A stretch of 64,000 bases of DNA from Octopus sinensis (lineage: Eukaryota): positions 14,136,001 through 14,200,000 of the forward strand of contig NC_043006.1 in assembly GCF_006345805.1 (NCBI RefSeq), in the 5' to 3' direction. A program made the translations under genes and the position numbers. Shown here piece after piece: positions 657 to 62,404 of this stretch (position 1 is the first letter of the stretch; each line of letters begins with the position of its first letter). The notes under the pieces were generated by a model. The model ran no database searches. It worked only from the letters and a program-made list of their open reading frames with translations, and was not told the DNA's origin.

Positions 657-787
657 CTCAAAGAATCTAGTTGGATATCTGCTATCAACACACTTGACTC
701 AAAGAATCTAGTTGGATATCTGCTATCAACACACTTGACTCAAAGAATCTAGTTGGATATCTGCTATCAACACACTTGACTCAAAGA
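657..787. repeat. Perfect 41-bp tandem repeat, 3 copies plus partial
   Basis: ctcaaagaatctagttggatatctgctatcaacacacttga starts at 657, 698 and 739; partial at 780. Confidence 0.95.
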
Positions 788-2306
788 GATCTTCTGAAGA
801 TTTTTTAGCCAATTTCGAACGTGTTTATAATGAACATTTTCGTATAAAAAAAAAATTGGTGAATGTAAAGAGTATTTTCAACAGATGCGTAGTTCTAAGC
901 GAAAACAAAATAATGAGGAAAGGTACAAGAAATATCCTGAAGAAGTCAATAAAAGTTTTACCAATGTTGGTCCAAAACTCGCATCAAAAATACCAAGAGA
1001 CAATAAAAAATTTCCTTGAACTTTTAAAAAAGATTCATTTATTCAAAATGAATCCAGTTACGGATGAGGAACTGAAGAACGCATTCATTCGTCCGAAGAC
1101 AAACGAAGTGCCTGGATGACTCCTTGAGTATGAGGATTGTTAAAATTGCATATAAATCAACAATAGTCTCATAGAATTCCGGTGTAGACTATGGGCTGAT
1201 AGAACTCATTGACATCAATACAGCTATGTCAAATGAACATGTTACACTTGGAATTTTCATCGACTTAGTAAAGGTTCCAAGTCATTGTTGATAATAGAAT
1301 ACTCAAAAAAAAAAAACACTTGAAATCTATGGAGTTACCGAGAAAAAATTATTATGGTTCGGAAGTTACCTAAGCAATAGATGCCAGTTTGTGCAATTTG
1401 TTGACACTGAATTCGAGTACAAACCAATATCTTGCGCTGTTCCTCGAGGATCAATATTAGGTCTCCCCCTTTTTCCTATATATGTTTATGATATGTACCG
1501 CACAGTTCCACTTCTGTTATCATTTGTGCCGATGGTACAAATCTTTTCTTGGCTAGTAAAGATTACCGTCCATTTACTCAAAGTAATGACCAACCAATTA
1601 TCACTCATAAATGACTGGTATTCCGCAAATAAGATTTCTCTGAAGGGAGATAAAACGAAGTACACTCTATTCTGTTCATCAGCTAATGATGATGATCTGC
1701 CCTTACAGCCACCAAAACTTCACTCTGGCCCAAAAGAAGGCAAAAGGTCTAGAATCTAGATCTTTTGACTTTTTTAATACATGTTTTAATAATAACTGTA
1801 GATGCAAGAATAAAATTGCATATGTACGTGACAATTTTTTTACAGTTTGTGTTTTTATTGTAAATATATCTGAACATGAGTATTTTCATTTCATTAATTA
1901 AATGCTGTTTTTTGCATAAGACAATTAAATTATTGCATAGGGGTTCCACGAGCCAGTGGAATGTTTCTTTGGGGTTCCGCTCCAGCAAAAAGATTGAAAA
2001 GCACTGGTCCAGATATATAAAATTCATGTGAATACTTATTGATGAAAATTTGAATTGGAAATTGCATATTCAAGCAATAGAACCCTAACTGTCAACACAA
2101 ATTAGAATAATTTGTAGGGGACATAAGTTTTTGGACAACAAAGCGATGAATACATCATATATATATATATTTATTGTTAATCCATATTCAGTATACGGTA
2201 ACCTAGCTTGGAGATTACCGTATAGTCAAGATTAAGTAAACTTCATATTTTACAAAAACGTTGAGTCAGGATTATAACAAAATTTTGAAACAAATTGATG
2301 GTCCCA

Positions 2307-3701: not shown

Positions 3702-4210
3702 GTTACATATCCCAGAGCTCCAATAATTACAGGTATAAACCTGAACTTATGATCTGGATAGAGTAACTGCAGATTTCTCAATAGTTCAGCATACGTGTTC
3801 TCTTTTACACTGATCTTCCAGCTTTAAGTTAACATCCGCTGGGCATCTAATTTCAACAACTGTGCACAGTTTCTCTTCTCTGTCCCAAATCATTATATCA
3901 GGTCTGTTGTGCTAACATTTTGTTGGGGTCTTCACTTGTACATTCCACCAGTATTCCTTTTTATGAGTAGCTATGGCTTCTACCATATTGTGAGTTCTTA
4001 TTTCTTTGTCCTCGGGATTATCTTTCCCACGGATTTCATTATAGAGTGTCCTTGCTACAACGTCACACCTCATCGGTAGATACCACCGTGATGACATTTT
4101 CGGACAATTGATTATGATGTGGGCGATATCTTCAGTATGAACTCCACAAAGTCTGCATCGGTTGTCACATTTTACGGCTTTTCCTGCATCTCTATCCCTT
4201 TTGTGCATCT

Positions 4211-4417
4211 CTTTATTCTTTTACTTGTTTCAGTCAGTTGACTGCGGCCATGCTGGAGCACCACCTTTAATCGAGCAACTCGACCCCGGGACTTATTCTT
4301 TTGTAAGCCCAGTACTTATTCTATCGAACTCTTTTGCCGACCCGCTAAGTAACGGGGACGTAAACACACCAGCATCGATTGTTAAGCAATGCTAGGGGGA
4401 CAAACACAGACACACAA

Positions 4418-4606: not shown

Positions 4607-5689
4607 AGGTACTTGGTTAACATCTCCTGTTCCTGGATTGCAAACGCATTCTCTTCAAAATGGGAGGTAGTAATCCGGCTATTGGTCCATGATAAGCTGC
4701 TTTGATGATCGATGTTACTATCATCACGGAGCTTTCTGGTAACTTATCCATGCATAGTCTTCTGCTCATATAGGCTCATCCTTTCATCTGATGATACGTT
4801 GCGGTAGAGTTGTGTGACTTCTTTGGGCATGTATTCTAGGTAATCAGACAAAGAGTGTTGCTCAAGGAGCTGCCTTCCAAGTCTTATGATGTTATCAGCC
4901 TCATGTACCCAAACTTGGTCAAGGGATGCACTTCGACACTTGGTGATCAACAGATGTTGCCGAATGCGACATTCAAAGGCATTTTGGATCGATGTTAAGC
5001 CTCTGTCGCCTTGTTTTCGTCACTGTTTATGTGGAAATCATGTGTGCTTTCGGGTTTTCACATCAATGGCTCAGATCTCATGAAGCGTCCAATCAAGCAG
5101 CCCAAATGTTGGTATGAGTTCTGGCACTGCAAACACATTGTGGGCTACCGTTTTATTGAATGCAGAAATTTCTGAGGTCCAAATTTTCTTTATTCAGCGG
5201 TAATATTCTTTAGTGACACGTGTTTTGTTACAGGTGCCATTGGAAGATATATTTTCATCCTCCCCTAGATACCTGTAACATTCCTCGTCAGATACAGGGG
5301 AAACAGACAAATCATTGATGGAGATGTTACTAGTTTTCCCCCTTTTCCCAAAAATATTACAACATTTATCCTGACCAAACTCCAACCCTACATCCTTTGA
5401 GAATGTTGTAACTAGGTCAAGGCTCTTTTTCATCACATGCATATTCTTTGCATAAAGTATTAAGTCATCCACAAAGAAACCGTGTAATTTTGGTATTTCT
5501 GTTTCCTTCCTTAACATGAATGACAAGGGCTTTACAGAAAGTATATACAGCATCACAGAGAGCCTGTCTCCTTGGAATATGCCTTTGCGATATTGTATTC
5601 TATCAGTGATAATACAGTCACTCTTTGTGTTTAATTTCAAGATGGTGGCCCACCATGAAGTCAGGCCAGCTATGGCTTTGACTATTCTC

Positions 5690-6230
5690 ACTGGAACTTT
5701 AGTTCACCACCCCTGGAGGTGAACTAGCGTACCGCTTTAGAAGGACCCTAGATAAACTTAAACTAAGAATTAAGGTTGTTGAAAAGCCAGGCAACCCTAT
5801 CAGATCTATAATTGGTAGAAGCTATCCTTTTAGTAGAACTCTCTGTACGGATAACTATTGCACTGTATGTAGATTTAGCCCACAAACGAACTGTAAAGCC
5901 AGAAATGTGGTCTATAGTATAAGATGTATAGAGGGACGATGCAGTAACAAGACAGTAACATACGTAGGGGAAACTGCAAGAAGCATTGGTGAGCGGGTGA
6001 ATGAACATTGGAGACAACTCAAGGAAGGTAAAAGCTCATCGATTCTGTACCAACACGCCGAACAAGAACACGGGGGATCAATCAATAACATAGAGATTAA
6101 GATATTGTCCACACATAGAACAGATGCAACAATTAGACAAATTACAGAAGCTACACATATAATAGAAAATAAACCTAGCCTGAATAGAAAACTAGAATGG
6201 AGCAATAGCGCACACCACAACATATGACAA
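5690..6230 (+). mobile_element. Penelope-like element fragment: Cys-rich linker + GIY-YIG endonuclease
   Basis: TPGGELA..RIKVVEKPG..C..C..C..NVVYSIRC..TYVGETARSIGERVNEH..EATHIIENKPSLN. Confidence 0.85.
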
Positions 6231-6693
6231 TAGTGGATCCTGCAAACATAATAAATACACAGGTAATTAAAGAAATAGAAATGAATATCTATATGTGTAT
6301 GTATGTGTGTATATATGTATATATATGTATATGTATATGTATGTATATATATATATATGTATATGTATATTTTTTTTTTTTCGATTAGATTTATTATTAT
6401 TATTACTAATATTGTTGTTATACATACATACAAGCATATGTAATGATAATAATGGGTGGATGTAAACACATGAACAAAATTAGAACAAAAGCAACAACAA
6501 CAAAAACAAAATACAAATTACAAGAATGTATATAACCAGAAGATACAAATATTACAGGCATCCCCCCCACACACACTAAATAAACATAGACGCACATAGA
6601 GATATAAGCATGCGCAAATGAAGACATACAATAGAAATACAAAATGGCTGACGGTTAGTAAGGAGAGACACAAGTAAGTGAGAAGAAAACAAA

Positions 6694-8780: not shown

Positions 8781-11700
8781 TAAATGCGCCCTTTTAAAGC
8801 CTAGCCAGGCTCATGGACCCGGTTTCCCGGTTTCTATGGCGTATGTGTTCCCCAGCTGGACGGGACACCAGTCCATCGCAGCGTTACTCATTTTTGCCAG
8901 CTGAGTGGACTGGAGCAACGTGAAATGAAGTGTTTTGCTCAAGAACACAACGCGTCGCCCGGTCCAGGAATCGAAACCACAATCTTACGATCATGATGCT
9001 GACACCCTAACCACTAAGCCACGCGCCTCCACTAGACTCATGGACCCGGTTTCCCGGTTTCTATGGCGTATGTGTTCCCCAGCTGGACGGGACGCCAGTC
9101 CATCGCAGCGTTACTCATTTTTGCCAGCTGAGTGGATTGAAGCAACGTGAAATGAAGTGTTTCGTTCAAGAACACAACGCATCGCCCGGTCCAGGAATCG
9201 AAACCACAATCTTACGATCATGATGCTGACACCCTAACCACTAAGCCACGCGCCTCCACTAGACTCATGGACCCGGTTTCCCGGTTTCTATGGCGTATGT
9301 GTTCCCACCAGATGAACGGGACACCAGTCCATCGCAGCGTTACTCATTTTTTGCCAGCTGAGTGGATTGAAGCAACGTGAAATGAAGTGTTTTGCTCAAG
9401 AACACAACGCATCGCCCGGTCCAGGAATCGAAACCACAATCTTACGATCATGATGCTGACACCCTAACCACTAAGCCACGCGCCTCCACTAGACTCATGG
9501 ACCCGGTTTCCCGGTTTCTATGGCGTATGTGTTCCCCAGCTGGACGGGACGCCAGTCCATCTCAGCGTTACTCATTTTTGCCAGCTGAGTGGATTGAAGC
9601 AACGTGAAATGAAGTGTTTCGTTCAAGAACACAACGCATCGCCCGGTCCAGGAATCGAAACCACAATCTTACGATCATGATGCTGACACCCTAACCACTA
9701 AGCCACGCGCCTCCACTAGACTCATGGACCCGGTTTCCCGGTTTCTATGGCGTATGTGTTCCCCAGCTGGACGGGACGCCAGTCCATCGCAGCGTTACTC
9801 ATTTTTGCCAGCTGAGTGGATTGAAGCAACGTGAAATGAAGTGTTTCGTTCAAGAACACAACGCATCGCCCGGTCCAGGAATCGAAACCACAATCTTACG
9901 ATCATGATGCTGACACCCTAACCACTAGGCCACGCGCCTCCACTAGACTCATGGACCCGGTTTCCCGGTTTCTATGGCGTATGTGTTCCCCAGCTGGACG
10001 GGACTCCAGTCCATCGCAGCGTTACTCATTTTTGCCAGCTGAGTGGATTGAAGCAACGTGAAATGAAGTGTTTCGTTCAAGAACACAACGCATCGCCCGG
10101 TCCAGGAATCGAAACCACAATCTTACGATCATGATGCTGACACCCTAACCACTAAGCCACGCGCCTCCACTAGGCTCATGGACCCCGGTTTCCCGGTTTC
10201 TATGGCGTATGTGTTCCCCAGCTGGACGGGACTCCAGTCCATCGCAGCGTTACTCATTTTTGCCAGCTGAGTGGATTGAAGCAACGTGAAATGAAGTGTT
10301 TTGTTCAAGAACACAACGCATCGCCCGGTCCAGGAATCGAAACCACAATCTTACGATCATGATGCTGACACCCTAACCACTAAGCCACGCGCCTCCACTA
10401 GACTCATGGACCCGGTTTCCCGGTTTCTATGGCGTATGTGTTCCCCAGCTGGACGGGACGCCAGTCCATCTCAGCGTTACTCATTTTTGCCAGCTGAGTG
10501 GATTGAAGCAACGTGAAATGAAGTGTTTTGTTCAAGAACACAACGCATCGCCCGGTCCAGGAATCGAAACCACAATCTTACGATCATGATGCTGACACCC
10601 TAACCACTAAGCCACGCGCCTCCACTAGGCTCATGGACCCGGTTTCCCGGTTTCTATGGCGTATGTGTTCCCCAGCTGGACGGGACTCCAGTCCATCGCA
10701 GCGTTACTCATTTTTGCCCGCTGAGTGGATTGAAGCAACGTGAAATGAAGTGTTTCGTTCAAGAACACAACGCATCGCCCGGTCCAGGAATCGAAACCAC
10801 AATCTTACGATCATGATGCTGACACCCTAACCACTAAGCCACGCGCCTCCACTAGGCTCATGGACCCGGTTTCCCGGTTTCTATGGCGTATGTGTTCCCC
10901 AGCTGGACGGGACTCCAGTCCATCGCAGCGTTACTCATTTTTGCCCGCTGAGTGGATTGAAGCAACGTGAAATGAAGTGTTTCGTTCAAGAACAACGCAT
11001 CGCCCGGTCCAGGAATCGAAACCACAATCTTACGATCATGATGCTGACACCCTAACCACTAAGCCACGCGCCTCCACTAGGCTCATGGACCCGGTTTCCC
11101 GGTTTCTATGGCGTATGTGTTCCCCAGCTGGACGGGACTCCAGTCCATCGCAGCGTTACTCATTTTTGCCCGCTGAGTGGATTGAAGCAACGTGAAATGA
11201 AGTGTTTCGTTCAAGAACACAACGCATCGCCCGGTCCAGGAATCGAAACCACAATCTTACGATCATGATGCTGACACCCTAACCACTAAGCCACGCGCCT
11301 CCACTAGGCTCATGGACCCGGTTTCCCGGTTTCTATGGCGTATGTGTTCCCCAGCTGGACGGGACTCCAGTCCATCGCAGCGTTACTCATTTTTGCCAGC
11401 TGAGTGGATTGAAGCAACGTGAAATGAAGTGTTTTGTTCAAGAAACACAACGCATCGCCCGGTCCAGGAATCGAAACCACAATCTTACGATCATGATGCT
11501 GACACCCTAACCACTAAGCCACGCGACTCCACTAGGCTCATGGACCCGGTTTCCCGGTTTCTATGGCGTATGTGTTCCCCAGCTGGATGGGACTCCAGTC
11601 CATCGCAGCGTTACTCATTTTTGCCAGCTGAGTGGATTGAAGCAACGTGAAATGAAGTGTTTTGTTCAAGAACACAACGCATCGCCCGGTCCAGGAATCG

Positions 11701-11986
11701 AAACCACAATCTTACGATCATGATGCTGACACCCTAACCACTAAGCCACGCGCCTCCACTAGGCTCATGGACCCGGTTTCCCGGTTTCTATGGCGTATGT
11801 GTTCCCCAGCTGGACGGGACTCCAGTCCATCGCAGCGTTACTCATTTTTGCCAGCTGAGTGGCCTGGAGCAACGTGAAATGAAGTGTTTTGCTCAAGAAC
11901 ACAATGCGTCGCCCGGTCCAGGAATCGAAACCACAATCTTACGATCATGATGCTGGCACCCTAACCACTAAGCCACGCGCCTCCAC
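8781..11986 (-). repeat. Tandem satellite of 14 x ~227-bp units derived from SINE family E
   Basis: ctcatggacc recurs at 8810, 9037, 9264, 9494, 9721, 9948, 10175, 10403, 10630, 10857, 11082, 11309, 11537, 11764; a dispersed monomer lies at ~27075-27328. Confidence 0.95.
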
Positions 11987-27074: not shown

Positions 27075-27328
27075 TAAATGCGCCCTCTTTTAAAGCCTAG
27101 CCAGGCTCAGGGACCCGGTTTCCCGGTTTCAATGGCGTATGTGTTCCCCAGCTGGACGGGACGCCAGGCTATCACAGCGTTACTCATTTTTGCAAGCTGA
27201 GTGGACTGGAGCAACGTGAAATGAAGTGTTTTGCTCAAGAACACAACACATCGCCCGTTCCAGCAATCGAAACCACAATCTTACGATCATGATGCTGACA
27301 CCCTAACCACTAAGCCACGCGCCTCCAC
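27075..27328 (-). mobile_element. SINE family E dispersed monomer (parent of the 227-bp satellite)
   Basis: Collinear with the satellite unit and retains the 3' tail atgcgccc..ttttaaagcctagcc; gcgatggactggcgtcccgtccag-type segment resembles the V-SINE domain (recalled similarity). Confidence 0.88.
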
Positions 27329-33889: not shown

Positions 33890-35272
33890 ATAGAGAAATT
33901 CAAAATTCCAAGAAATTTTAAACGGACTGGACGTAAACATCCAATTCACGATGGAATATAGCCACCACAACTCCCCTTCCTCGATATCCTCATTAAGAAA
34001 GCTAATAATGTAATAGAAACAGACATATATTATAAGCCTACAGATTCTAAGCAATATCTTCCATTCAATTCATGCCACCCCAGACACACCAGGATGAATA
34101 TCCCCTTCAATCTAGCAAAAAGGATATGCACTATAGTTTCTAATGCAAACACCAGAGACACACGACTACAAGAACTAAAAGATACCCTTATCACCAGGAA
34201 CTACCCACCTTCACTTAGACATTTGCATTCAACGTGCCCTTCAACTTAACATCCAGGAACTGAGACATCCTAAATCAAAGAAAACTTACGACCAAAAGCC
34301 TACCATACATCTCCACACACAACCCTCTCAACAATGAAGCCTTCGGCACCATCCTCCACAACCAACCCCTCCTAAAAAAAGACCACAGAATGAACACAAT
34401 CCTCCAAACACACACGATCATAAAAAGCAAGAGACAGCCTAAATCTATGAAAAGTCTCCTAACACAAGCCCGAATACACTCTTCAACACAGAAGCCGACA
34501 GTAAAAAATGTGGAAGACCCAATTGCGGGATATGCGATTATCTAATTGAGGGATCAGAGTTCTCCTTCAAACAGGGACAACGGTTTACAGTGAAAAGCAA
34601 CTTCACATGTGCTTCGGAGAACCTGATATACACACTAACCTGCTCTGGGTGTCAAGAGCAGTACATAGGCCAAACAAAAAATTTTTGCGTAAAAGAATAG
34701 CCCGGCACAGATCCCAGATAAAAATTCCCCAAAACAGAAAAATAGCTTTCAGCCAACACATAGATACTTGCGCCAACAACAAAACACCAGGCTTCAGGAT
34801 TTTCCCCCCTCTACCAATTTAGGGACGATACAACCTCGAGACAACGAATAGTAAAGAAACTCTCTTTATTACAAAATACAGGCCCCTTCTTAACGGTCTA
34901 TACGACAAACGATTAATAACACCTCAGCTTTAGAATAACAGAAATACACACCAAATATTACATTCCAAAGATCCATTACAAATCATCCCCAATCACACAG
35001 CTATAATCCATAACGTGCCAACTTCAAGTCATACAACACCTCACTACTTCCACTCATATCATATTCTCCCTTCTCTTTTTTCTTCTTCTTCTTCCCCTTC
35101 TTCTTCATCATCATCATTATCATCATCATCGTCGTCGTCATCATCTCCATCATCATCATCTTCTTCTTCTCCTTCTTCTTCTTCTTCCTTCTGCTCTTTT
35201 CTTTCTTCATCATCATCATCATCATCAACATCGTCATCTTCTTCTTCTTCTTCTTCTTCTTCTGCCTCTTCT

Positions 35273-36287: not shown

Positions 36288-36380
36288 GCGGTACATATGT
36301 TTCGGGCTTTATTGAACAACTAATTCTTATATCAATGCATAGTTGATACAACAGATAGATCAAAAGCCTTCTTCAGACGC
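36288..36380 (-). ncRNA. Type I hammerhead motif with long stem II
   Basis: Minus strand gcgt-CTGAAGA-a-ggcttt...aaagcc-c-GAAA-catatg-TA-ccgc; inner helix ttgtatcaa/ttgatataa; palindromic acatatgt. Confidence 0.65.
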
Positions 36381-41489: not shown

Positions 41490-41800
41490 TGAAATGCAAA
41501 AAAAAAAGAAGAAATTGATTTACTGTGCAACTTGCCTACAATGTAAAGGATACTACATTGGTGAAACCGGAACAGGACTGCATGATAGAGTTCGTGTTCA
41601 TAAACAACAAATTAGATACCCCTCTGTCAGAAACACCACTTGCAGTGATCACTTCACGTCATGTAGAAAGAGAAAATTCACAATCTTCCCCTTCTTTAAG
41701 TTATGGTCAGACAATGAACATTCAACGAACTTCTATCATAAGAAAGTATAAACCACAACTAAACACACAAAAAATTATATTCTACACACACCTCCAATAA
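41490..41800 (+). mobile_element. Penelope-like GIY-YIG fragment
   Basis: LIYCATCLQCKGYYIGETGTGLHDRVRVH..CSDHFTSC..IIRKYKPQLN (frameshifted). Confidence 0.8.
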
Positions 41801-41944
41801 AGGGATTCTCCAAATAGAAGTGGATGACACCCAGACATTTAATCATTCTAGGTACGCTAACGTTTCACTAATCCCCCTCCACCCCCAATGCGCATGCAAA
41901 CTTAAATACTTGAGTAGTGTAGATGCGTATATATATATATATAT

Positions 41945-42300
41945 ATAATTAAAATCTTAGGGTAGCAAAAATATTTATCGAAAAATTCTTAGTTACCAGT
42001 GGTCTAGCGAGAACGAAAAAATTAGTCAATAGACTATATATTATTCAAAGAAGAATACAGTGTACGTTCAAACACAAAATAGATACCCGAAGAATAGGAT
42101 AGCTGACTCGCTAGAAAGAGCAGTTAAAACTCCAAGCCACCAATTGTTGTAATTCCGAAAGTGATTGGAAAATAAAAACTTTTACCTTAATCCTAGACCC
42201 TGCAAGGTTTCTGCAGACTTAAATACAGATTGAAATTAAAATAATTTCAGCCTATATCTGGCGCTACTTGTTCAGTAGGATGCCAGGACTGAACACATAG
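41945..42300 (-). mobile_element. Diverged monomer of the 491-bp HHR element family, flanked by (TA)n on both sides
   Basis: Aligns by eye with the unit (tagggtagcaaaaa vs tagggaggcaaaaa; ccagtggtctag vs ccagcggcctag; taattccg..aaaa..tttacc); HHR at 42190-42281. Confidence 0.75.
42190..42281 (-). ncRNA. Type I hammerhead motif with long stem II (diverged)
   Basis: Minus strand atccta-CTGAACA-a-gtag...ctgc-a-GAAA-cct tgca ggg-TC-taggat. Confidence 0.7.
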
Positions 42301-42303
42301 GCA

Positions 42304-43451: not shown

Positions 43452-43598
<147 letters not shown>

Positions 43599-43612
43599 AG
43601 ATAGATAGATAT

Positions 43613-43685
<73 letters not shown>

Positions 43686-43851
43686 TATATATATATATAG
43701 ATATATATATATATATATATATATATAACACAATCAAGGAACGGCCATAATAGGCCATTCACCCACTAGAAATAACAGCCAAAAAGCTTCAACCGCAAAA
43801 TAACATTAATTCCGTAAACCAGGAGAAAATTAAAAAACATTTACCCTGAAA

Positions 43852-43956
43852 TTCCTTATACGATGCACCGTTTCGTCTACTGTTTAATGGTAAACTAACC
43901 TGATTAAATTAAATCAAGCCAATCTACCATAGGCCCTTAGATTCATCAGTAAGGAA
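43852..43956 (-). ncRNA. Type I hammerhead ribozyme, array copy 1
   Basis: Reverse complement of 45001-45105. Confidence 0.82.
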
Positions 43957-44342
43957 TAGCCAAATCGGAACAGATATTTTTCACGAGGCATTCTCGTCCA
44001 TGCCTCGCCAATATCTGACCTAAAATTTTCAAATCGTCGCACTCGCGCCAAATTTATCGGCAGCAAATAAATATAAGCCGCCGATTCCATTACGGAACCA
44101 ACCAGAAAATTCATAATTAATCAATATAGGGAGGCAAAAAAATTTTGTAGAATTCTTTTGCCCCCAGCGGCCTAGTGGGAAAAAATTAAATAGTCATAAA
44201 CCATTTTTAAGTTCAATATCACAATCAAGGAACGGCCATAATAGGCCATTCACCCACTAGAAATAACAGCCAAAAAGCTTCAACCGCAAAATAACATTAA
44301 TTCCGTAAACCAGGAGAAAATTAAAAAACATTTACCCTGAAA

Positions 44343-44447
44343 TTCCTTATACGATGCACCGTTTCGTCTACTGTTTAATGGTAAACTAACCTGATTAAAT
44401 TAAATCAAGCCAATCTACCATAGGCCCTTAGATTCATCAGTAAGGAA
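44343..44447 (-). ncRNA. Type I hammerhead ribozyme, array copy 2
   Basis: Reverse complement of 45001-45105. Confidence 0.82.
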
Positions 44448-45000
44448 TAGCCAAATCGGAACAGATATTTTTCACGGGGCATTCTCGTCCATGCCTCGCC
44501 AATATCTGACCTAAAATTTTCAAATCGTCGCACTCGCGCCAAATTTATCGGCAGCAAATAAATATAAGCCGCCGATTCCATTACGGAACCAACCAGAAAA
44601 TTCATAATTAATCAATATAGGGAGGCAAAAAAATTTTGTAGAATTCTTTTGCCCCCAGCGGCCTAGTGGGAAAAAATTAAATAGTCATAAACCATTTTTA
44701 AGTTCAATATCACAATCAAGGAACGGCCATAATAGGCCATTCACCCACTAGAAATAACAGCCAAAAAGCTTCAACCGCAAAATAACATTAATTCCGTAAA
44801 TCAGGAGAAAATTAAAAAACATTTACCCTATATTGATTAATTATGAATTTTCTGGTTGGTTCCGTAATGGAATCGGCGGCTTATATTTATTTGCTGCCGA
44901 TAAATTTGGCGCGAGTGCGACGATTTGAAAATTTTAGGTCAGATATTGGCGAGGCATGGACGAGAATGCCTCGTGAAAAATATCTGTTCCGATTTGGCTA

Positions 45001-45105
45001 TTCCTTACTGATGAATCTAAGGGCCTATGGTAGATTGGCTTGATTTAATTTAATCAGGTTAGTTTACCATTAAACAGTAGACGAAACGGTGCATCGTATA
45101 AGGAA
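45001..45105 (+). ncRNA. Type I hammerhead ribozyme, array copy 3
   Basis: Stem I ttcctta/taaggaa; CTGATGA 45008-45014; long stem II 45016-45081; GAAA 45083-45086; stem III acgg-tgca-tcgt; GUA site, predicted cut after 45098. Confidence 0.85.
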
Positions 45106-45491
45106 TTTCAGGGTAAATGTTTTTTAATTTTCTCCTGGTTTACGGAATTAATGTTATTTTGCGGTTGAAGCTTTTTGGCTGTTATTTCTAGTGGGTGAAT
45201 GGCCTATTATGGCCGTTCCTTGATTGTGATATTGAACTTAAAAATGGTTTATGACTATTTAATTTTTTCCCACTAGGCCGCTGGGGGCAAAAGAATTCTA
45301 CAAAATTTTTTTGCCTCCCTATATTGATTAATTATGAATTTTCTGGTTGGTTCCGTAATGGAATCGGCGGCTTATATTTATTTGCTGCCGATAAATTTGG
45401 CGCGAGTGCGACGATTTGAAAATTTTAGGTCAGATATTGGCGAGGCATGGACGAGAATGCCTCGTGAAAAATATCTGTTCCGATTTGGCTA

Positions 45492-45596
45492 TTCCTTACT
45501 GATGAATCTAAGGGCCTATGGTAGATTGGCTTGATTTAATTTAATCAGGTTAGTTTACCATTAAACAGTAGACGAAACGGTGCATCGTACAAGGAA
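45492..45596 (+). ncRNA. Type I hammerhead ribozyme, array copy 4
   Basis: As copy 3, but t>c at 45590 breaks the first stem I pair. Confidence 0.8.
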
Positions 45597-45982
45597 TTTC
45601 AGGGTAAATGTTTTTTAATTTTCTCCTGGTTTACGGAATTAATGTTATTTTGCGGTTGAAGCTTTTTGGCTGTTATTTCTAGTGGGTGAATGGCCTATTA
45701 TGGCCGTTCCTTGATTGTGATATTGAACTTAAAAATGGTTTATGACTATTTAATTTTTTCCCACTAGGCCGCTGGGGGCAAAAGAATTCTACAAAATTTT
45801 TTTGCCTCCCTATATTGATTAATTATGAATTTTCTGGTTGGTTCCGTAATGGAATCGGCGGCTTATATTTATTTGCTGCCGATAAATTTGGCGCGAGTGC
45901 GACGATTTGAAAATTTTAGGTCAGATATTGGCGAGGCATGGACGAGAATGCCTCGTGAAAAATATCTGTTCCGATTTGGCTA

Positions 45983-46087
45983 TTCCTTACTGATGAATCT
46001 AAGGGCCTATGGTAGATTGGCTTGATTTAATTTAATCAGGTTAGTTTACCATTAAACAGTAGACGAAACGGTGCATCGTATAAGGAA
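45983..46087 (+). ncRNA. Type I hammerhead ribozyme, array copy 5
   Basis: Identical to copy 3. Confidence 0.82.
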
Positions 46088-46312
46088 TTTCAGGGTAAAT
46101 GTTTTTTAATTTTCTCCTGGTTTACGGAATTAATGTTATTTTGCGGTTGAAGCTTTTTGGCTGTTATTTCTAGTGGGTGAATGGCCTATTATGGCCGTTC
46201 CTTGATTGTGATATTGAACTTAAAAATGGTTTATGACTATTTAATTTTTTCCCACTAGGCCGCTGGGGGCAAAAGAATTCTACAAAATTTTTTTGCCTCC
46301 CTATATTGATTG

Positions 46313-46364
<52 letters not shown>

Positions 46365-46532
46365 TACGACGGGCTTCTTTCAGTTTCCGTCTACTAAATC
46401 CACTCACAAGGTTTTGGTCGGCCTGAGGCTATAGTAGAAGACACCTGCCCAAGGTGCCACGCAGTGGGACTGAACCTGGAACCATGCGGTTGGTAAGCAA
46501 GCTACTTACCACACAGCCACAAATACACATTT

Positions 46533-49789: not shown

Positions 49790-51450
49790 AATTTTGTACA
49801 TTATTTACATTATTTACATTTGACGTGTTTGCGAACAGGTGATAGTCAGACGAGGCCAAATCAGGAGAATAGGGACGGCGATCAACTAGTTCAAAGCTAC
49901 AGTCATACACAGTAGCCATTGAAACCAAGGTGTTGTGTGCTGGAACATTGTCCTGATGAAACAAACCCATTTCGAAAGTTTTCCTGGGCGTTTTGTCTGG
50001 ATATCCCTTCGTAACTGCCTCAGCAAGTTGGCACAGTACTTTCCATTGATGGTGTGACCCTTTTCCATGTAGCCAATGAACACAATGTGTCTTTTGTATC
50101 CCAAAAAATTGAGACCATTACCTTCCCTGCAGATGAAACAACCTTGGCCTTCTTTGGAACAGGTGAGAAAAGGAGGAGTGTTTCCACTGCAGGGATTGTC
50201 TCTTTGTCTCCGGCACAAAGTAATGAAGCCAACACTACATCTTGGGTTAAGAAGCGTTCAAGGAATCCAGTTGGATCTGCCTCAAACAATGTCAGATTTT
50301 CCCGTGGTATGATCAGCCTGGTGTGCTTTTCATCAGGTGTCAAAAGACGTGGCACCCATCGTGAAGATTAACTGTGTCGTCATAAAAGACATAAAACGCA
50401 TAACGCCAACATGACCGTGTCGTGACTAATCAAATAGGTTAAGTTATTAGTTACGCAGTAGACTTAAAGTAAATTTTGAGAATTTTCCCGGGAGTTCAAT
50501 ATACTAGCTTTTTATAAAATTTAGTCAAGCTTCTAGAAAATTCGGCAGAATTATTTGGTGGGAAAATTCTCAAACCCTTCAACCGTGAGTGATATTTCGT
50601 CTGCATCCAAAATTTGAAAGTGGTCACTGATAATATCTCTACAACTCCATGCGCAAAAATAATCATTGTTTAATCTTTAAAGCCAAAATATTGAATTTGA
50701 ACTTTGAATGTAAAATGTCAGAACAAACACTCCCAGGTAATTTTTCTGACACTCCACCAATTCTTCTAATCGTCGTGCCAAGTTCATAGTGCAGAATATT
50801 CTCTACTCTGTTATGGGCCATGCTAATAGCTTCGGCTGTTTGATTTATTGTCAATCACCTATTTCTTTACTACCCACAAGGGGCTAAACACAGAGGAAAC
50901 AAACAAGGACAGTCAAACGGAATAAATCGCTTACATCGACCCCAGTGCGTAACTGGTACTTAATTTATCGACCCCGAAAGGATGAAAGGCAAAGTCGACC
51001 TCGGCGGAATTTGAACTCAGAACGTAACGGCAGACGAAATACGGCAACGCATTTCGCCCGGCGTGCTAACGTTTCTGCCAGCTCGCCTGTCATCCTTCAG
51101 AATGTGATGAACACGATCAATGTTTTTTTTCGGTTGTGGCAACTGTGGAATGTCCAGACCTAAGGTCATTTCTACAAATTTCCCTTCTCCTCCTAAATTC
51201 AACTGCCCACTTTTGCACTGATGACAAAGCTGAAATGTTAGCCCCTAATGCAACAGCATTGTCAGCATGAATGTCGTTGGGGGCAAAACCCTTTTTCTGA
51301 AGGTACTTGATGACAGCGCGATGCCAAATTTTGTACCATTTTCAAGAGAAGTCGCTACTAGTTACTTTTCAAGTCTTCTTTGAACAGCTAGATGTCAGAT
51401 TATTTGGAAAGAAGCAATGCAGTTATTAACAGGAAAAGTTGGAATTAATA
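49790..51450 (-). mobile_element. Decayed near full-length mariner, interrupted by SINE A (50858-51087) and a ~400-bp insertion (50367-50772)
   Basis: HRAVIKYL..VQKWAVEF..ENILHYELG / RWVPRLLT..FLTQD..KKAKVVSSAGKVM..FWD..FHQDNVPAH..PYSPDLASSDYHLF. Confidence 0.88.
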
Positions 51451-57451: not shown

Positions 57452-57684
57452 TGACGGCGAGCTGGCAGAAACGTTAGCCCGCCGGGTGAAATGCTTAGCG
57501 GTATTTCGTCTGTCGTTACGTTCTGAGTTCAAATTCCGCCGAGGTCGACTTTGCCTTTCATCCTTTCGGGGGTCGATAAATAAAGTACCAGTTTCGCACT
57601 GGGCTCGATGTAACCGACTTAATCCCTTTGTCTGTCCTTGTTTGTCCCCTCTATGTTTAGCCCCTTGTGGGTAGTAAAGAAATA
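57452..57684 (+). mobile_element. SINE family A
   Basis: Family match. Confidence 0.87.
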
Positions 57685-57689
57685 AATAT

Positions 57690-57980
57690 GATAAAATTTA
57701 GAGTATATATTCCCAAGGCATCGATGCTGTTGCCTCGTGGAATATTAATTCCTCCTGGCTGCTTTGCCGATTAGACGGGCCAGTGGTAAATTGACTTGAT
57801 TAAATTTAATTTAATTTAATTAGGCTCGTTTACCAAAAAGTACGTCGAAACAATGCATTGTCCAAAGATGATTAAGGTAAATGTTTTTAATTTTCCTTGA
57901 TTTCTGAATTACTACTATTTAGCGGTTTGAGTTTAGCTGCTCGTTTTAGTGAGTTGAATGGCCTATTAAGGCCATTCCTT
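57690..57980 (+). mobile_element. Diverged partial copy of the 491-bp HHR element
   Basis: aggca..tgcctcgtg hairpin, HHR region, ggtaaatgtttttaatttt and gaatggcc-tattaa-ggccattc hairpin, all collinear with the unit. Confidence 0.8.
57762..57867 (+). ncRNA. Type I hammerhead motif with long stem II (diverged)
   Basis: ctttg-CCGATTA-gacg...cgtc-GAAA-caa tgca ttg-TC-caaag. Confidence 0.7.
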
Positions 57981-58435
57981 ATACTCTTGTCCACTCAATC
58001 AGGATTAGACCGGGAACTAAACAATATCAACAATACTATAACTTAATCTGATTGAACTTTGAGCTCTTAAATCATTCGAATCTGTGCAGATTTTGTGTAA
58101 ATTACCCTGTGTATTACAAATCTGTTTGACACAGACTCCAGTATTACATACACCGTCGTTTCCACCCATCAGATTACAGAGCAAGTATCAGCAAACATCT
58201 TTGACTCTTTCATAGAATCGTTCATAACTTATCAAAACCTATTATGTAAACTTCTAAAATATAATTGAAAATATGAATAATAAAAAGTTCGGGATTTAAA
58301 AGCAATTATTCTTTCGTGTACGTATACGTGTGTGTCTGTGATTACTGCTTTTCAATACAAAATAGAGAAAGTTGATGAATGTGCTAAACCACATTTATAA
58401 AGAACAAGGAAAATTTAATCATATTATACTGATAT

Positions 58436-61098: not shown

Positions 61099-61513
61099 TG
61101 GCGAGCTGGCAGAATCGTTAGCACACCGGGCGAAATGCTTAGCGGTATTTCGTCTACCACTACGTTCTGAGTTCAAATTCCGCCGAGGTCGACTTTGTCT
61201 TTCATCCTTTCGGGGTCGATAAATTAAGTACCAGTTACGCACTGGGGTCGATGTAATCGACTTAATACCTATGTCTGACCTTGTTTGTCCCCTCTGTGTT
61301 TAGCCCCTTGTGGGTAATAAAGAAATAGGTATTTGGTCTGCCGCTACGTTGAGCTCAAATTCCGCCGGGGTCGACTTTGCCTTTCATCCTTTTGGGGTCG
61401 ATTAAATAAGTACCAGTTACGTACTGGGGTCGATGTAATCGACTTAATACCTATGTCTGTCCTTGTTTGTCCTCTCGCTGTGTTTAGCCCCTTGTGGGTA
61501 GTAAAGAAATAGG
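61099..61513 (+). mobile_element. SINE family A with tandemly repeated 3' part inside one TSD
   Basis: TSD tattatactgagcc at 61085-61098 and 61514-61527. Confidence 0.87.
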
Positions 61514-62404
61514 TATTATACTGAGCCAGACTAAATGTAGTAACGATGGGACGGTGTGCTCCGGACAGGATTCAGGAGAAAGCTATCCTGATTGACGAAA
61601 TCTTGTAAACATTCATTGGTTTGACTATTTAGTCAGGGATTGAAAGGCAGCATTGAACCATGATCTTTACCTTTTTATTTCGGGGGTTTCCGAAAGAAAA
61701 AAAGGAAAGAGAATCCTCCAGAGAAGGTCAGGCTCAGATATACTTGCAATAGGGTAAGCTCATCAGACGCTCTGACCCCTTTTGCTAATTCTTCCACTCA
61801 ACCATTCAAATACTGGCACAAGGTCAGTAGATTCGGGGGAAGAGACAAGTCGATTCCAACGACCCCAGTGTTCAACTGGTACTTATTTTATTGTAACCCC
61901 GAAAGGATAGAAGGCAAATTCGACAAAGGCAGGATTTGAACTCAAGGTAAGGACGGACGAAATGCTGCTATGTATTTTGCCTGGCGTGCTAACGATTCCG
62001 CCAGCTCGCCACCTTAATCTTTCTTAGCTTCATGCGTCTTCTCAAGCACAGCAGATCACCAGAAGTGTCGGTTGTTTGTCATCGCCTTTGTGAGACTCAA
62101 CAACTGAGGATCATATTTCACCACCTCATTCCAGATTTTCCTGGGTCTGCCTATTCCACAGGTTCCCACCTCGATTAGAAAGCAGCACTTCATCCTCCAA
62201 ATTAGAGTTCAGTACATCTTCCATCAAATTAAGATTTTCAAAGATTTTACAGCAATATAAAGACAAGGAATGATACAAGCAGACTGCTGGCAACCAGATC
62301 TTACTTTTTATCTCTCATCAATATGATCGAATATTTGTTCAGTATTCATGTTGATATACAAGTTGTAGTAATCATTACAATATTCTTGTTTATTATAGCA
62401 AGGT

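What the first reader, a model, noticed from the sequence alone, without database searches (positions are those of the whole stretch)
43729..46311. Head-to-head multimers of a 491-bp non-coding unit, one hammerhead ribozyme per unit: a candidate young retrozyme-like element
Seen: 2.24 units on the minus strand and about 3 units on the plus strand, giving 1101-bp inverted arms (43729-44829 vs 45110-46210) with a 280-bp spacer and only three substitutions. Each full unit folds as a type I hammerhead: stem I ttcctta/taaggaa, CUGAUGA, GAAA, stem III with a palindromic UGCA loop and a GUA site. Stem II is extended to ~65 nt and includes 19 contiguous pairs, five of them G-U, which pair only on the ribozyme strand. 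The unit has further hairpins (atcggcggc/gctgccgat, cgaggcat/atgcctcg, gaatggcc/ggccgttc). Both outer ends are ribozyme-strand 3' ends abutting (TA)n. Known: tandem HHR repeats (non-LTR retrozymes, newt satellite 2, Dolichopoda pDo500, schistosome Sm-alpha) self-cleave into monomers, some shown to circularise, and PLEs carry HHRs. Inference: a 491-nt linear or circular RNA copied by a PLE reverse transcriptase. I do not recognise this long-stem-II, inverted-multimer form as a described family.
Basis: partly seen in the sequence, partly recalled or inferred. Interest (0 to 1): 0.92.

Follow-up and report, generated by a model that had tools for sequence, protein, structure and literature searches.

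The report
Octopus hammerhead retrozyme, head-to-head insertion
This is a young insertion of a non-coding 491-bp repeat that carries a hammerhead ribozyme, a known class of retroelement (non-LTR retrozyme), and its head-to-head layout inside a (TA)n microsatellite matches how Penelope-like retrotransposon enzymes integrate, so it is a clear example rather than a new kind of element.

Summary
A 491-bp unit forms a minus-strand array (43725-44829, 2.25 units) and a plus-strand array (44826-46317, 3.04 units) inside one (TA)n tract. Each full unit has a type I hammerhead motif. Rfam finds no hammerhead, but a descriptor scan finds 4 strict hits against 0.05 expected. Two old, diverged copies in the same window (41945-42302 minus, 57693-57982 plus) keep all three helices through compensatory changes: 86% of pairs hold versus 33-40% in slid controls. 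Helix III is marginal or unstable as a hairpin but forms a 12-bp self-duplex in all three copies, so the ribozyme probably acts as a dimer.

The window also holds three PLE endonuclease relics. The host is Octopus or a close relative.

Best reading: a new family of a known class (non-LTR retrozyme), inserted by reverse transcription primed from both DNA strands.

Caveats:
- The young ribozyme has an A.C mismatch where G10.1-C11.1 is normally conserved.
- Self-cleavage, circular RNA and the assembly itself could not be tested.
- No copies outside this window could be retrieved.

The parts
43725..44829 (-). Left array: 2.25 units of the 491-bp element, sense strand is the minus strand. The sense 3' end is at the left edge (unit position about 130-134), abutting (TA)n.
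44826..46317 (+). Right array: 3.04 units, sense strand is the plus strand. The sense 3' end is at the right edge (unit position about 231-237), abutting (TA)n.
44826..44829 (.). Head-to-head junction. The 4-nt overlap CCCT/AGGG is shared by the inner end of the minus array (unit 12-15) and of the plus array (unit 219-222). It is read as annealing of the 3' ends of two cDNAs.
   Evidence: direct reading
45001..45105 (+). Type I hammerhead motif, predicted cleavage between 45098 and 45099.
45492..45596 (+). Type I hammerhead motif with U1.1>C at 45590, predicted cleavage between 45589 and 45590.
45983..46087 (+). Type I hammerhead motif, predicted cleavage between 46080 and 46081.
44343..44447 (-). 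Type I hammerhead motif on the minus strand, predicted cleavage between 44350 and 44349.
43852..43956 (-). Type I hammerhead motif on the minus strand, predicted cleavage between 43859 and 43858.
45220..45232 (+). Candidate reverse-transcription start site A (unit 122-134): UUGAUUGUGAUAU, just 3' of the hairpin at unit 95-123. The unit position matches the left outer end of the locus.
45324..45335 (+). Candidate reverse-transcription start site B (unit 226-237): UUGAUUAAUUAU, just 3' of the hairpin at unit 185-220. The unit position matches the right outer end of the locus and the 3' end of the third copy.
43452..43727 (.). Left part of the host (TA)n/(TAGA)n microsatellite, the target site.
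46315..46366 (.). Right part of the host (TA)n microsatellite. A SINE at 46366-46520 interrupts it, and (TA)n resumes at 46532.
41945..42302 (-). Third, old family copy covering unit about 365>491>1>237, between two (TA)n tracts. Its hammerhead relic is at 42190-42281 with core CUGAACA (G8>C). Its 3' end is at unit 237.
57693..57982 (+). Solo old family copy covering unit about 322>491>1>125, roughly 77% identical to the young unit. Its hammerhead relic is at 57762-57867 with core CCGAUUA, an intact G10.1-C11.1 pair and a GUC site.
41518..41670 (+). 5'-truncated PLE relic (GIY-YIG endonuclease C-terminus). Its 3' side reaches the (TA)n at 41926, tail-to-tail with the third copy.
5706..6209 (+). 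PLE relic: an intact 174-aa ORF with CxxC linker and GIY-YIG endonuclease. It has 2130 relatives, and the long ones are RT plus C-terminal endonuclease.
34443..34676 (+). Weak PLE relic with CxxC linker and GIY-YIG motif.

Best explanation
The locus is a recent insertion of a non-autonomous, non-coding retroelement of the non-LTR retrozyme class. The host is an Octopus or close relative, and the element is mobilised by the enzyme of a Penelope-like element (PLE).

Shown here:
- A 491-nt unit whose sense strand is strongly structured and carries a type I hammerhead.
- The three hammerhead helices were kept by compensatory change during the family's history.
- Helix III (4 bp plus a UGCA loop) is marginal or unstable as a hairpin but forms a 12-bp self-duplex in every copy. 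The ribozyme is therefore built to act as a dimer between neighbouring units of a multimeric transcript.

Inferred integration:
1. A PLE RT/GIY-YIG protein nicked both strands of a (TA)n tract.
2. Each 3'-OH primed reverse transcription at an internal site of the RNA. The sites are unit about 130 on one side and about 237 on the other. Each lies just 3' of a stable hairpin followed by UUGAUU, and each ends in UAU.
3. Each cDNA ran for more than two unit lengths, on either a circular monomer (rolling circle) or an uncleaved multimer.
4. The two cDNA 3' ends annealed through 4 nt (CCCT/AGGG) and were filled in.

This gives two arrays head-to-head with their 3' ends outward.

Also inferred: self-cleavage to 491-nt monomers and circularisation by a host tRNA ligase.
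For: Array anatomy and unit phase.

Hammerhead motif well beyond chance: 4 strict hits against 0.05 expected.

Strand-specific folding: unit -159 versus -110 kcal/mol, z = -6.5. As a circle, 59% of bases are paired.

Covariation among three family members:
- 86.3% of cells paired, against 33-40% in slid controls.
- 11 of 17 pairs changed on both sides, against 1-3 in slid controls.
- 0 of 500 shuffles reach the observed values.

Helix III: self-duplex -17.5, -18.9 and -15.1 kcal/mol, against hairpin -0.2, -1.7 and 0.0.

Mobility:
- Three separate loci in 64 kb. All span the cleavage site, so none was copied from a cleaved linear monomer.
- Two independent insertions end at the same unit position (237), on (TA)n.
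- Both 3'-end sites share the layout hairpin, UUGAUU, UAU. TTGATT occurs only three times in the unit.

PLE presence: three GIY-YIG relics in the window. Long relatives are RT (YVDD) plus C-terminal CxxC and GIY-YIG. The best named hit is from Octopus bimaculoides.

Literature:
- Non-LTR retrozymes are tandem 150-450 bp type I hammerhead repeats with low GC that form circular RNAs (PMC7229834).
- Retrozymes are related to PLE pseudo-LTRs and range from 51 to 972 bp (10.64898/2026.07.22.740005).
- PLE insertions are partial tandems plus an inverted 5'-truncated copy, with a (TA)n preference (PMC8557442).
- Purified PLE protein cleaves AT-rich DNA, extends both strands, and initiates at two internal RNA sites downstream of the hammerhead (PMC11167929).
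- Octopus vulgaris has annotated PLE families (PMC13282606).
Against: - Rfam covariance models do not report a hammerhead, even at E<=10. This is plausibly because of the 68-nt stem II, but that could not be tested.
- The young copies have A10.1.C11.1 where G-C is the most conserved helix pair. Published precedents for a mismatch there are U.U (PMC3088659, PMC7229834).
- Only the young copies have an intact CUGAUGA box.
- There is no RNA evidence of any kind.
- No similarity was found between the unit and the 3' flanks of the PLE relics in the window. No full-length octopus PLE with its pseudo-LTR was available for comparison.
- No copies outside this window could be retrieved. Copy number and the distribution of ends are therefore unknown, and the covariation rests on three hand-anchored sequences.
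- Target-site duplications cannot be read inside (TA)n.
Confidence: 0.68

Rival explanations
1. The element moves by the same PLE route, but the hammerhead in the young lineage is crippled or irrelevant. The template was an unprocessed multimeric read-through transcript of an older array, not a self-cleaved circular RNA.
For: - A.C mismatch at 10.1-11.1 in all five young copies.
- Every insertion spans the cleavage site.
- PLE mini-hammerheads cleave poorly in vitro (PMC4209133).
Against: - The helices and the palindromic helix III were maintained by compensatory changes across the family, which implies selection on the ribozyme fold.
- The CUGAUGA box is intact precisely in the recently active lineage.
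- Animal retrozymes that have been tested do accumulate as circular RNAs (PMC7229834).
- A circular template equally explains insertions that span the cleavage site.
Confidence: 0.3
2. The arrangement arose at the DNA level. A short hammerhead-bearing satellite underwent a fold-back inversion (microhomology-mediated template switch or break repair), with no reverse transcription involved in forming this locus.
For: - The 4-nt microhomology at the junction is typical of replication-based fold-back events.
- The units are nearly identical, as expected after a recent duplication.
Against: - Both outer ends lie in the same (TA)n tract, as expected for one insertion.
- The right end coincides to the nucleotide with the 3' end of an independent old copy (unit 237).
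- Both ends share a hairpin-UUGAUU-UAU context.
- Flanking unique sequence is not part of the inverted duplication.
- The architecture is the one produced by PLE enzymes (PMC8557442, PMC11167929).
Confidence: 0.12
3. The inverted arrangement is an assembly artefact, such as a chimeric or fold-back long read placed in a low-complexity region. The real locus would be a simple one-orientation array.
For: Near-perfect 1.1-kb inverted arms embedded in long (TA)n tracts are a context in which assemblers and long-read chemistries produce palindromic artefacts. No reads are available to check.
Against: - The junction is not at a symmetry centre (unit 12-15 joined to unit 219-222).
- The arms differ in length (2.25 versus 3.04 units) and end at different unit positions.
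- Each arm carries private substitutions.
- The structure has a known biological precedent.
Confidence: 0.08

Closest known systems
Non-LTR retrozymes of animals (Cervera & de la Pena 2020, PMC7229834; Li et al. 2026 preprint 10.64898/2026.07.22.740005)
   Same: - Non-coding, low-GC (37%) tandem repeat of a few hundred bp, with one type I hammerhead per unit.
- Highly self-paired sense RNA.
- Dispersed monomeric or fragmentary copies.
- Co-occurrence with PLEs.
- A weak helix III with a palindromic loop, and a mismatch at the base of helix II, as in the axolotl HHR_Amex2 motif that works better as a dimer.
   Different: - The unit (491 bp) exceeds the 170-400 nt RNAs shown experimentally, though it is within the 51-972 bp bioinformatic range.
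- Helix II carries a conserved 57-73-nt extension, where the canonical motif has a 4-bp stem and a loop.
- The mismatch is A.C (A.A in the third copy), not U.U.
- No cephalopod member appears in the papers searched.
- RNA and circularity were not shown here.
Penelope-like elements and their pseudo-LTR hammerheads (PMC4209133, PMC8557442, PMC11167929)
   Same: - Integration signature: partial tandems, an adjacent inverted 5'-truncated copy with 3' ends outward, an AT-rich or (TA)n target, and internal reverse-transcription start sites downstream of the hammerhead.
- A hammerhead selected to act as a dimer, with an enlarged helix II.
- Opposite-strand hammerhead pairs.
   Different: - There is no RT/GIY-YIG ORF inside the element, so it is non-autonomous.
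- Helix III is a full 4 bp plus tetraloop, not minimal.
- There is no extra nucleotide between A9 and 10.1.
- Sequence similarity to an octopus PLE pseudo-LTR could not be tested.
Newt/salamander satellite 2 and Schistosoma Sm-alpha hammerhead repeats
   Same: Tandem genomic repeats that encode type I hammerheads. The short palindromic helix III makes them cleave as dimers.
   Different: - Those are very high-copy satellite or SINE-like families with compact helix II and conserved loop 1-loop 2 contacts.
- Here only 2-3 units per arm are seen, helix II is extended, and genome-wide copy number is unknown.
L1 twin-priming inversions (established knowledge of LINE-1 integration; not re-checked in the papers read here)
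   Same: Two cDNAs primed from the two nicked target strands and joined internally by microhomology, giving an inverted 5' segment.
   Different: - In L1 both cDNAs copy one linear mRNA and give an inversion or deletion within a single copy.
- Here each cDNA is multimeric, and the enzyme class (PLE) extends both strands as a normal property.

Membership tests
Hammerhead ribozyme, type I | Conserved core CUGANGA ... GAAA and an NUH cleavage triplet in the correct order and spacing | tested here: met
   All five young copies have CUGAUGA, GAAA and GUA. The relics have 1-2 core substitutions: CUGAACA and CCGAUUA.
Hammerhead ribozyme, type I | Three helices around the core, with helix I open, supported by covariation | tested here: met
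   86.3% of cells paired against 33-40% in slid controls. 11 of 17 pairs changed on both sides. 0 of 500 shuffles reach the observed values. Only three sequences, anchored by hand.
Hammerhead ribozyme, type I | G10.1-C11.1 pair closing helix II | tested here: not met
   Young copies have A.C and the third copy A.A. Only the solo relic has G-C. Published natural exceptions are U.U (PMC3088659, PMC7229834).
Hammerhead ribozyme, type I | Match to the Rfam hammerhead covariance models | tested here: not met
   No hit at the gathering threshold or at E<=10. The 68-nt insertion in helix II is the likely reason, but a trimmed sequence could not be submitted to the tool.
Hammerhead ribozyme, type I | Site-specific self-cleavage | not testable with these tools
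   Needs in vitro transcription of monomer and dimer constructs.
Hammerhead ribozyme, type I | Loop 1-loop 2 tertiary contacts | not tested
   Helix II has an internal loop 4-5 bp from the core that could play this role. This is speculation only.
Non-LTR retrozyme | [quoted passage not shown] | tested here: met
   491-bp period, five hammerhead motifs in 5.3 units.
Non-LTR retrozyme | Non-coding, with no LTR, primer-binding site or polypurine tract, and low GC | tested here: met
   The longest ORF is 66 aa and has no homologue. GC is 37%. There are no terminal repeats other than the unit itself.
Non-LTR retrozyme | Highly self-paired sense RNA | tested here: met
   Linear -159 kcal/mol with z = -6.5. 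Circular -154.9 with 59% paired. Antisense -107.5.
Non-LTR retrozyme | Expressed as unit-length linear and circular RNA | not testable with these tools
   No transcriptome access.
Non-LTR retrozyme | Co-occurrence with PLEs in the host genome | tested here: met
   Three PLE endonuclease relics in the window. PLE families are annotated in O. vulgaris (PMC13282606).
Non-LTR retrozyme | Sequence relationship to a PLE pseudo-LTR | tested here: inconclusive
   No similarity to the 3' flanks of the relics in the window, or to the O. bimaculoides PLE locus L001. No full-length octopus PLE was available.
Penelope-like element (autonomous) | Single ORF with RT and GIY-YIG endonuclease | tested here: not met
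   The only ORF in the unit is 66 aa long and has no homologue. The Pfam ORF survey covered ORFs of at least 70 aa and so did not include it. tblastn with 150 PLE endonuclease-containing relatives, some full-length RT plus endonuclease, hits only 5.7, 34.5 and 41.5 kb.
PLE-type integration product | Partial tandem plus inverted 5'-truncated copy, 3' ends outward, AT-rich or (TA)n target | tested here: met
   compared with PMC8557442 and PMC11167929.

The most novel reading that the evidence does not exclude
The family may be a structurally distinct, currently active cephalopod retrozyme with two distinguishing features. First, its hammerhead carries a conserved 57-73-nt helix II extension. Second, its RNA has two defined internal reverse-transcription start modules (hairpin, UUGAUU, UAU). 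On this reading the locus is the first direct genomic footprint of double-strand-primed, PLE-type integration of a retrozyme. That would turn the proposed PLE-retrozyme dependence from a correlation into a testable mechanism. As a by-product, the 1.1-kb inverted arms would yield long double-stranded RNA in an animal with very active RNA editing.
Probability: 0.25. Interest if true: 0.55.

Novelty: new member of a known kind. Interest (0 to 1): 0.36.

Why it matters
Animal retrozymes are thought to be mobilised by Penelope-like elements. The published support is co-occurrence and similarity to PLE pseudo-LTRs.

This locus adds a different kind of evidence. It is a very young insertion whose anatomy matches the in vitro behaviour of a purified PLE enzyme:
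- both target strands primed;
- an AT-rich microsatellite target;
- recurrent internal start sites downstream of the ribozyme;
- a microhomology join in the middle.

It also extends the class to cephalopods, for which the searched literature holds no report. It supplies a hammerhead variant (long helix II, A.C at 10.1-11.1, dimer-type helix III) whose activity would be informative.

It is not a new kind of element, so the original score of 0.92 is too high.

Tried and rejected
- **Rfam, whole window at gathering threshold and the locus at E<=10.** No hammerhead was reported, only (TA)n-driven noise such as mir-1277. A stem II-trimmed sequence could not be submitted.
- **Protein handle.** The 66-aa sense ORF was used to fish for other copies through the exact-match index and the homologue search. 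Both found nothing. The ORF is taken as non-coding.
- **DNA pattern scans.** Two metagenome scans and one viral-contig scan, using a family-conserved block and a young-copy string, gave 0 hits. These collections evidently hold no octopus DNA.
- **O. bimaculoides PLE locus L001.** It has no unit and no hammerhead, so it says nothing about a partner. It did confirm shared SINE families.
- **First homologue search with the PLE endonuclease ORF.** This failed because of word-index sensitivity. The exhaustive HMMER search succeeded.
- **RVT_1 hit at 5197-5703.** It is a LINE fragment (it carries zf-RVT), not a PLE RT.
- **Relaxed hammerhead scan.** It gave one extra site at 36300-36376(-), rejected because its helix III is not a hairpin.
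- **Pol III transcription.** Considered unlikely because the sense strand has eight runs of T>=4.
- **MAFFT alignment of the third copy.** It misaligned the ribozyme region, so the helices were compared by anchoring on the core.
Full report
**1. Observation**

- A 491-bp unit forms a minus-strand array at 43725-44829 (2.25 units) and a plus-strand array at 44826-46317 (3.04 units).
- This gives inverted arms of 1105 nt (43725-44829 and 45110-46214) with a 280-nt spacer.
- In unit phase (position 1 = 45099, the first base after the predicted cleavage site), the arrays differ from the consensus at only four positions: 44477, 44801, 45590 and 46312. All are transitions and each is private to one unit. 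Three of them lie within the arms.
- The locus sits in one long (TA)n/(TAGA)n microsatellite, which also received a SINE at 46366-46520.

**2. Is the hammerhead real?**

Rfam does not report one, either at gathering thresholds for the whole window or at E<=10 for the locus. The motif is nevertheless complete in all five full units: UUCCUUA, CUGAUGA, a 68-nt stem II, GAAA, ACGG-UGCA-UCGU, A, then UAAGGAA.
- A strict descriptor finds four copies. The fifth has U1.1>C. Only 0.05 hits are expected per shuffled window.
- The motif folds at -34.7 kcal/mol on this strand and -20.5 on the complement. The whole unit folds at -159 versus -110 (z = -6.5). The asymmetry comes from G.U pairs.

- A solo copy lies at 57693-57982 on the plus strand, about 77% identical.
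- A third copy lies at 41945-42302 on the minus strand, between two (TA)n tracts.
- Both span the ribozyme. Their helices differ in sequence but still pair:

| Element | Young | Third | Solo |
|---|---|---|---|
| Stem I | UUCCUUA/UAAGGAA | AUCCUA/UAGGAU | CUUUG/CAAAG |
| Base of stem II | UCUA/UAGA | GUAG/CUGC | GACG/CGUC |
| Stem III | CGG/UCG | CCU/GGG | CAA/UUG |

- The UGCA loop and GAAA are invariant.
- On the trimmed cores, 86.3% of cells pair, against 33-40% when partners are slid by 1-3 columns. Eleven of 17 pairs changed on both sides, against 1-3 in the slid controls. No shuffle out of 500 reaches the observed values.
- The long stem II extension is also kept (68, 57 and 73 nt; z = -5.7, -3.9 and -4.7) and is strand-specific in all three.

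Caveats on this evidence:
- There are only three sequences, and I anchored them by hand.
- The relics have decayed cores (CUGAACA and CCGAUUA).
- The young copies have A.C at 10.1-11.1, where G-C is the most conserved helix pair. The solo relic has G-C and the third copy has A.A.
- Published natural mismatches at this position are U.U (PMC3088659). In axolotl HHR_Amex2 the U.U goes with weak monomer activity and better dimer activity (PMC7229834).

**3. A dimer-type ribozyme**

Helix III is marginal or unstable as a hairpin (-0.2, -1.7 and 0.0 kcal/mol). In every copy the same 12 nt are self-complementary and form a 12-bp duplex (-17.5, -18.9 and -15.1). A short helix III capped by a palindromic loop is the published signature of metazoan type I and PLE hammerheads that cleave as dimers in tandem transcripts (PMC4209133, PMC7229834).

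**4. The architecture**

They are described for Penelope-like elements.
- PLE insertions are partial tandems, often with an adjacent inverted 5'-truncated copy, and favour (TA)n (PMC8557442).
- It starts reverse transcription at two internal RNA sites downstream of the hammerhead, and it does not need ribozyme cleavage for insertion in vitro (PMC11167929).
- Opposite-strand hammerhead pairs 100-700 bp apart were noted in 2014 (PMC4209133).

The locus fits point by point.
- Both outer ends are sense 3' ends on (TA)n.
- The left end is at unit about 130-134 and the right end at unit about 231-237.
- The independent third copy ends at the same unit 237, also on (TA)n.
- Both sites have the same context: a stable hairpin (-15.1 and -18.8 kcal/mol), then UUGAUU, then 6-7 nt ending in UAU. 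TTGATT occurs only three times in the unit.
- At the inner junction the minus array stops at unit 12 and the plus array starts at unit 219. The 4-nt overlap CCCT/AGGG is what two cDNA 3' ends annealing would leave.
- Every insertion spans the cleavage site. The template was therefore circular or multimeric, not a cleaved linear monomer.

**5. Context**

- The unit is non-coding. Its 66-aa ORF has no homologue.
- GC is 37%.
- Eight T runs on the sense strand argue against Pol III transcription.
- The window contains three 5'-truncated PLE relics with GIY-YIG endonuclease C-termini, at 5706-6209, about 34443-34676 and about 41518-41670.
- The best-preserved relic has 2130 relatives. The long ones combine an RT (YVDD) with a C-terminal CxxC linker and GIY-YIG, which is the canonical PLE layout. 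The closest named relative is an Octopus bimaculoides protein.
- The 41.5-kb relic and the third retrozyme copy lie tail-to-tail on one (TA)n tract.
- The window's SINE families occur in an O. bimaculoides locus at 82-92% identity, so the host is Octopus or a close relative.
- O. vulgaris has annotated PLE families. Its repeat paper does not mention hammerheads or retrozymes (PMC13282606).

**6. Mechanism**

- Shown: array anatomy, motif, covariation, dimer-type helix III, recurrent 3' termini, (TA)n targets, and PLE relics.
- Inferred: a PLE RT/endonuclease nicked both strands of the (TA)n tract. It initiated at the two hairpin-UUGAUU sites and copied more than two unit lengths on each side, from a circular monomer or an uncleaved multimer. 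The two cDNAs were joined by microhomology.
- Also inferred: dimer-mode self-cleavage and circularisation by a tRNA ligase, as in other animal retrozymes (PMC7229834).

Rival readings:
- The same route with a dead ribozyme and a multimeric template (0.30).
- A DNA-level fold-back of a satellite (0.12).
- An assembly artefact (0.08).

**7. Comparison and verdict**

The element meets the testable defining features of a non-LTR retrozyme and of a PLE-type integration product.
- It fails two hammerhead criteria, the Rfam match and the G10.1-C11.1 pair. Catalysis is therefore the weakest link.
- It is not an autonomous PLE.
- Unit size is within the published range of 51-972 bp (10.64898/2026.07.22.740005).
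- The distinctive points are the conserved helix II extension, the A.C closing pair, the cephalopod host, and the unusually legible insertion footprint.

I classify it as a new member of a known kind.

**8. Limits**

- No eukaryotic genome or transcriptome collection could be searched by DNA.
- All attempts to retrieve copies outside the window failed.
- Copy number, activity, the partner PLE, RNA forms and assembly correctness remain open.

Noticed in passing
window 8807-11986: Fourteen tandem copies of a 227-bp SINE-like element (TRF periods 227 and 455, 97-98% matches). The same element occurs as dispersed single copies, for example 27103-27328 at 95% identity. A tandemly amplified SINE is unusual, and there is no hammerhead in it.
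   Followed up: partly
window 5706-6209 (+): PLE endonuclease relic that is still an intact 174-aa ORF, 53% identical to an O. bimaculoides protein. It is 5'-truncated with no RT upstream, and its 3' side runs into a (TA/TATG)n tract at 6285-6370. A 201-aa antisense ORF (5915-6517) overlaps it and has no Pfam hit.
   Followed up: partly
window 3915-4220 (-) and 5197-5703 (-): LINE relic with RVT_1 (E = 2.9e-10) and a zf-RVT finger. It abuts the PLE relic on the opposite strand.
   Followed up: no
window 49889-50367 (-): Mariner-type Transposase_1 fragments in two frames, a frameshifted DNA-transposon relic.
   Followed up: no
window 46366-46520: A SINE copy, 86-93% identical to at least eight near-full-length copies in the window (two further partial copies match at 81-86%), is inserted in the same (TA)n tract as the array. 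This microsatellite has therefore been hit at least twice by retroelements.
   Followed up: partly
window 41518-42302: A PLE endonuclease relic (plus strand) and the third retrozyme copy (minus strand) lie tail-to-tail, separated only by (TA)n at 41926-41948. This could be chance co-targeting of one microsatellite or a single compound insertion.
   Followed up: partly
window 36300-36376 (-): A relaxed hammerhead descriptor hit (CUGAAGA, 66 nt, GAAA). Its helix III segment is not a hairpin, so it is probably chance.
   Followed up: partly
window 44477, 44801, 45590, 46312: All four private substitutions in the array are transitions. Two of them break predicted pairs: U1.1>C at 45590, and a U>C in the CGAGGCAU/AUGCCUCG hairpin at 44477. 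With only four changes it is impossible to separate reverse-transcription error, RNA editing of the template, and post-insertion mutation.
   Followed up: no
window 657-792 and 739-1116 (+): A 41-bp tandem repeat (3.3 copies) overlaps an ORF with a weak, sub-threshold TPR_Edg1 match (E = 2.5e-4). It is possibly an exon fragment or chance.
   Followed up: no
window 61144-61517: Two tandem copies (182-bp period, 91% matches) of the SINE family that also flanks the solo retrozyme copy at 57455-57689.
   Followed up: no
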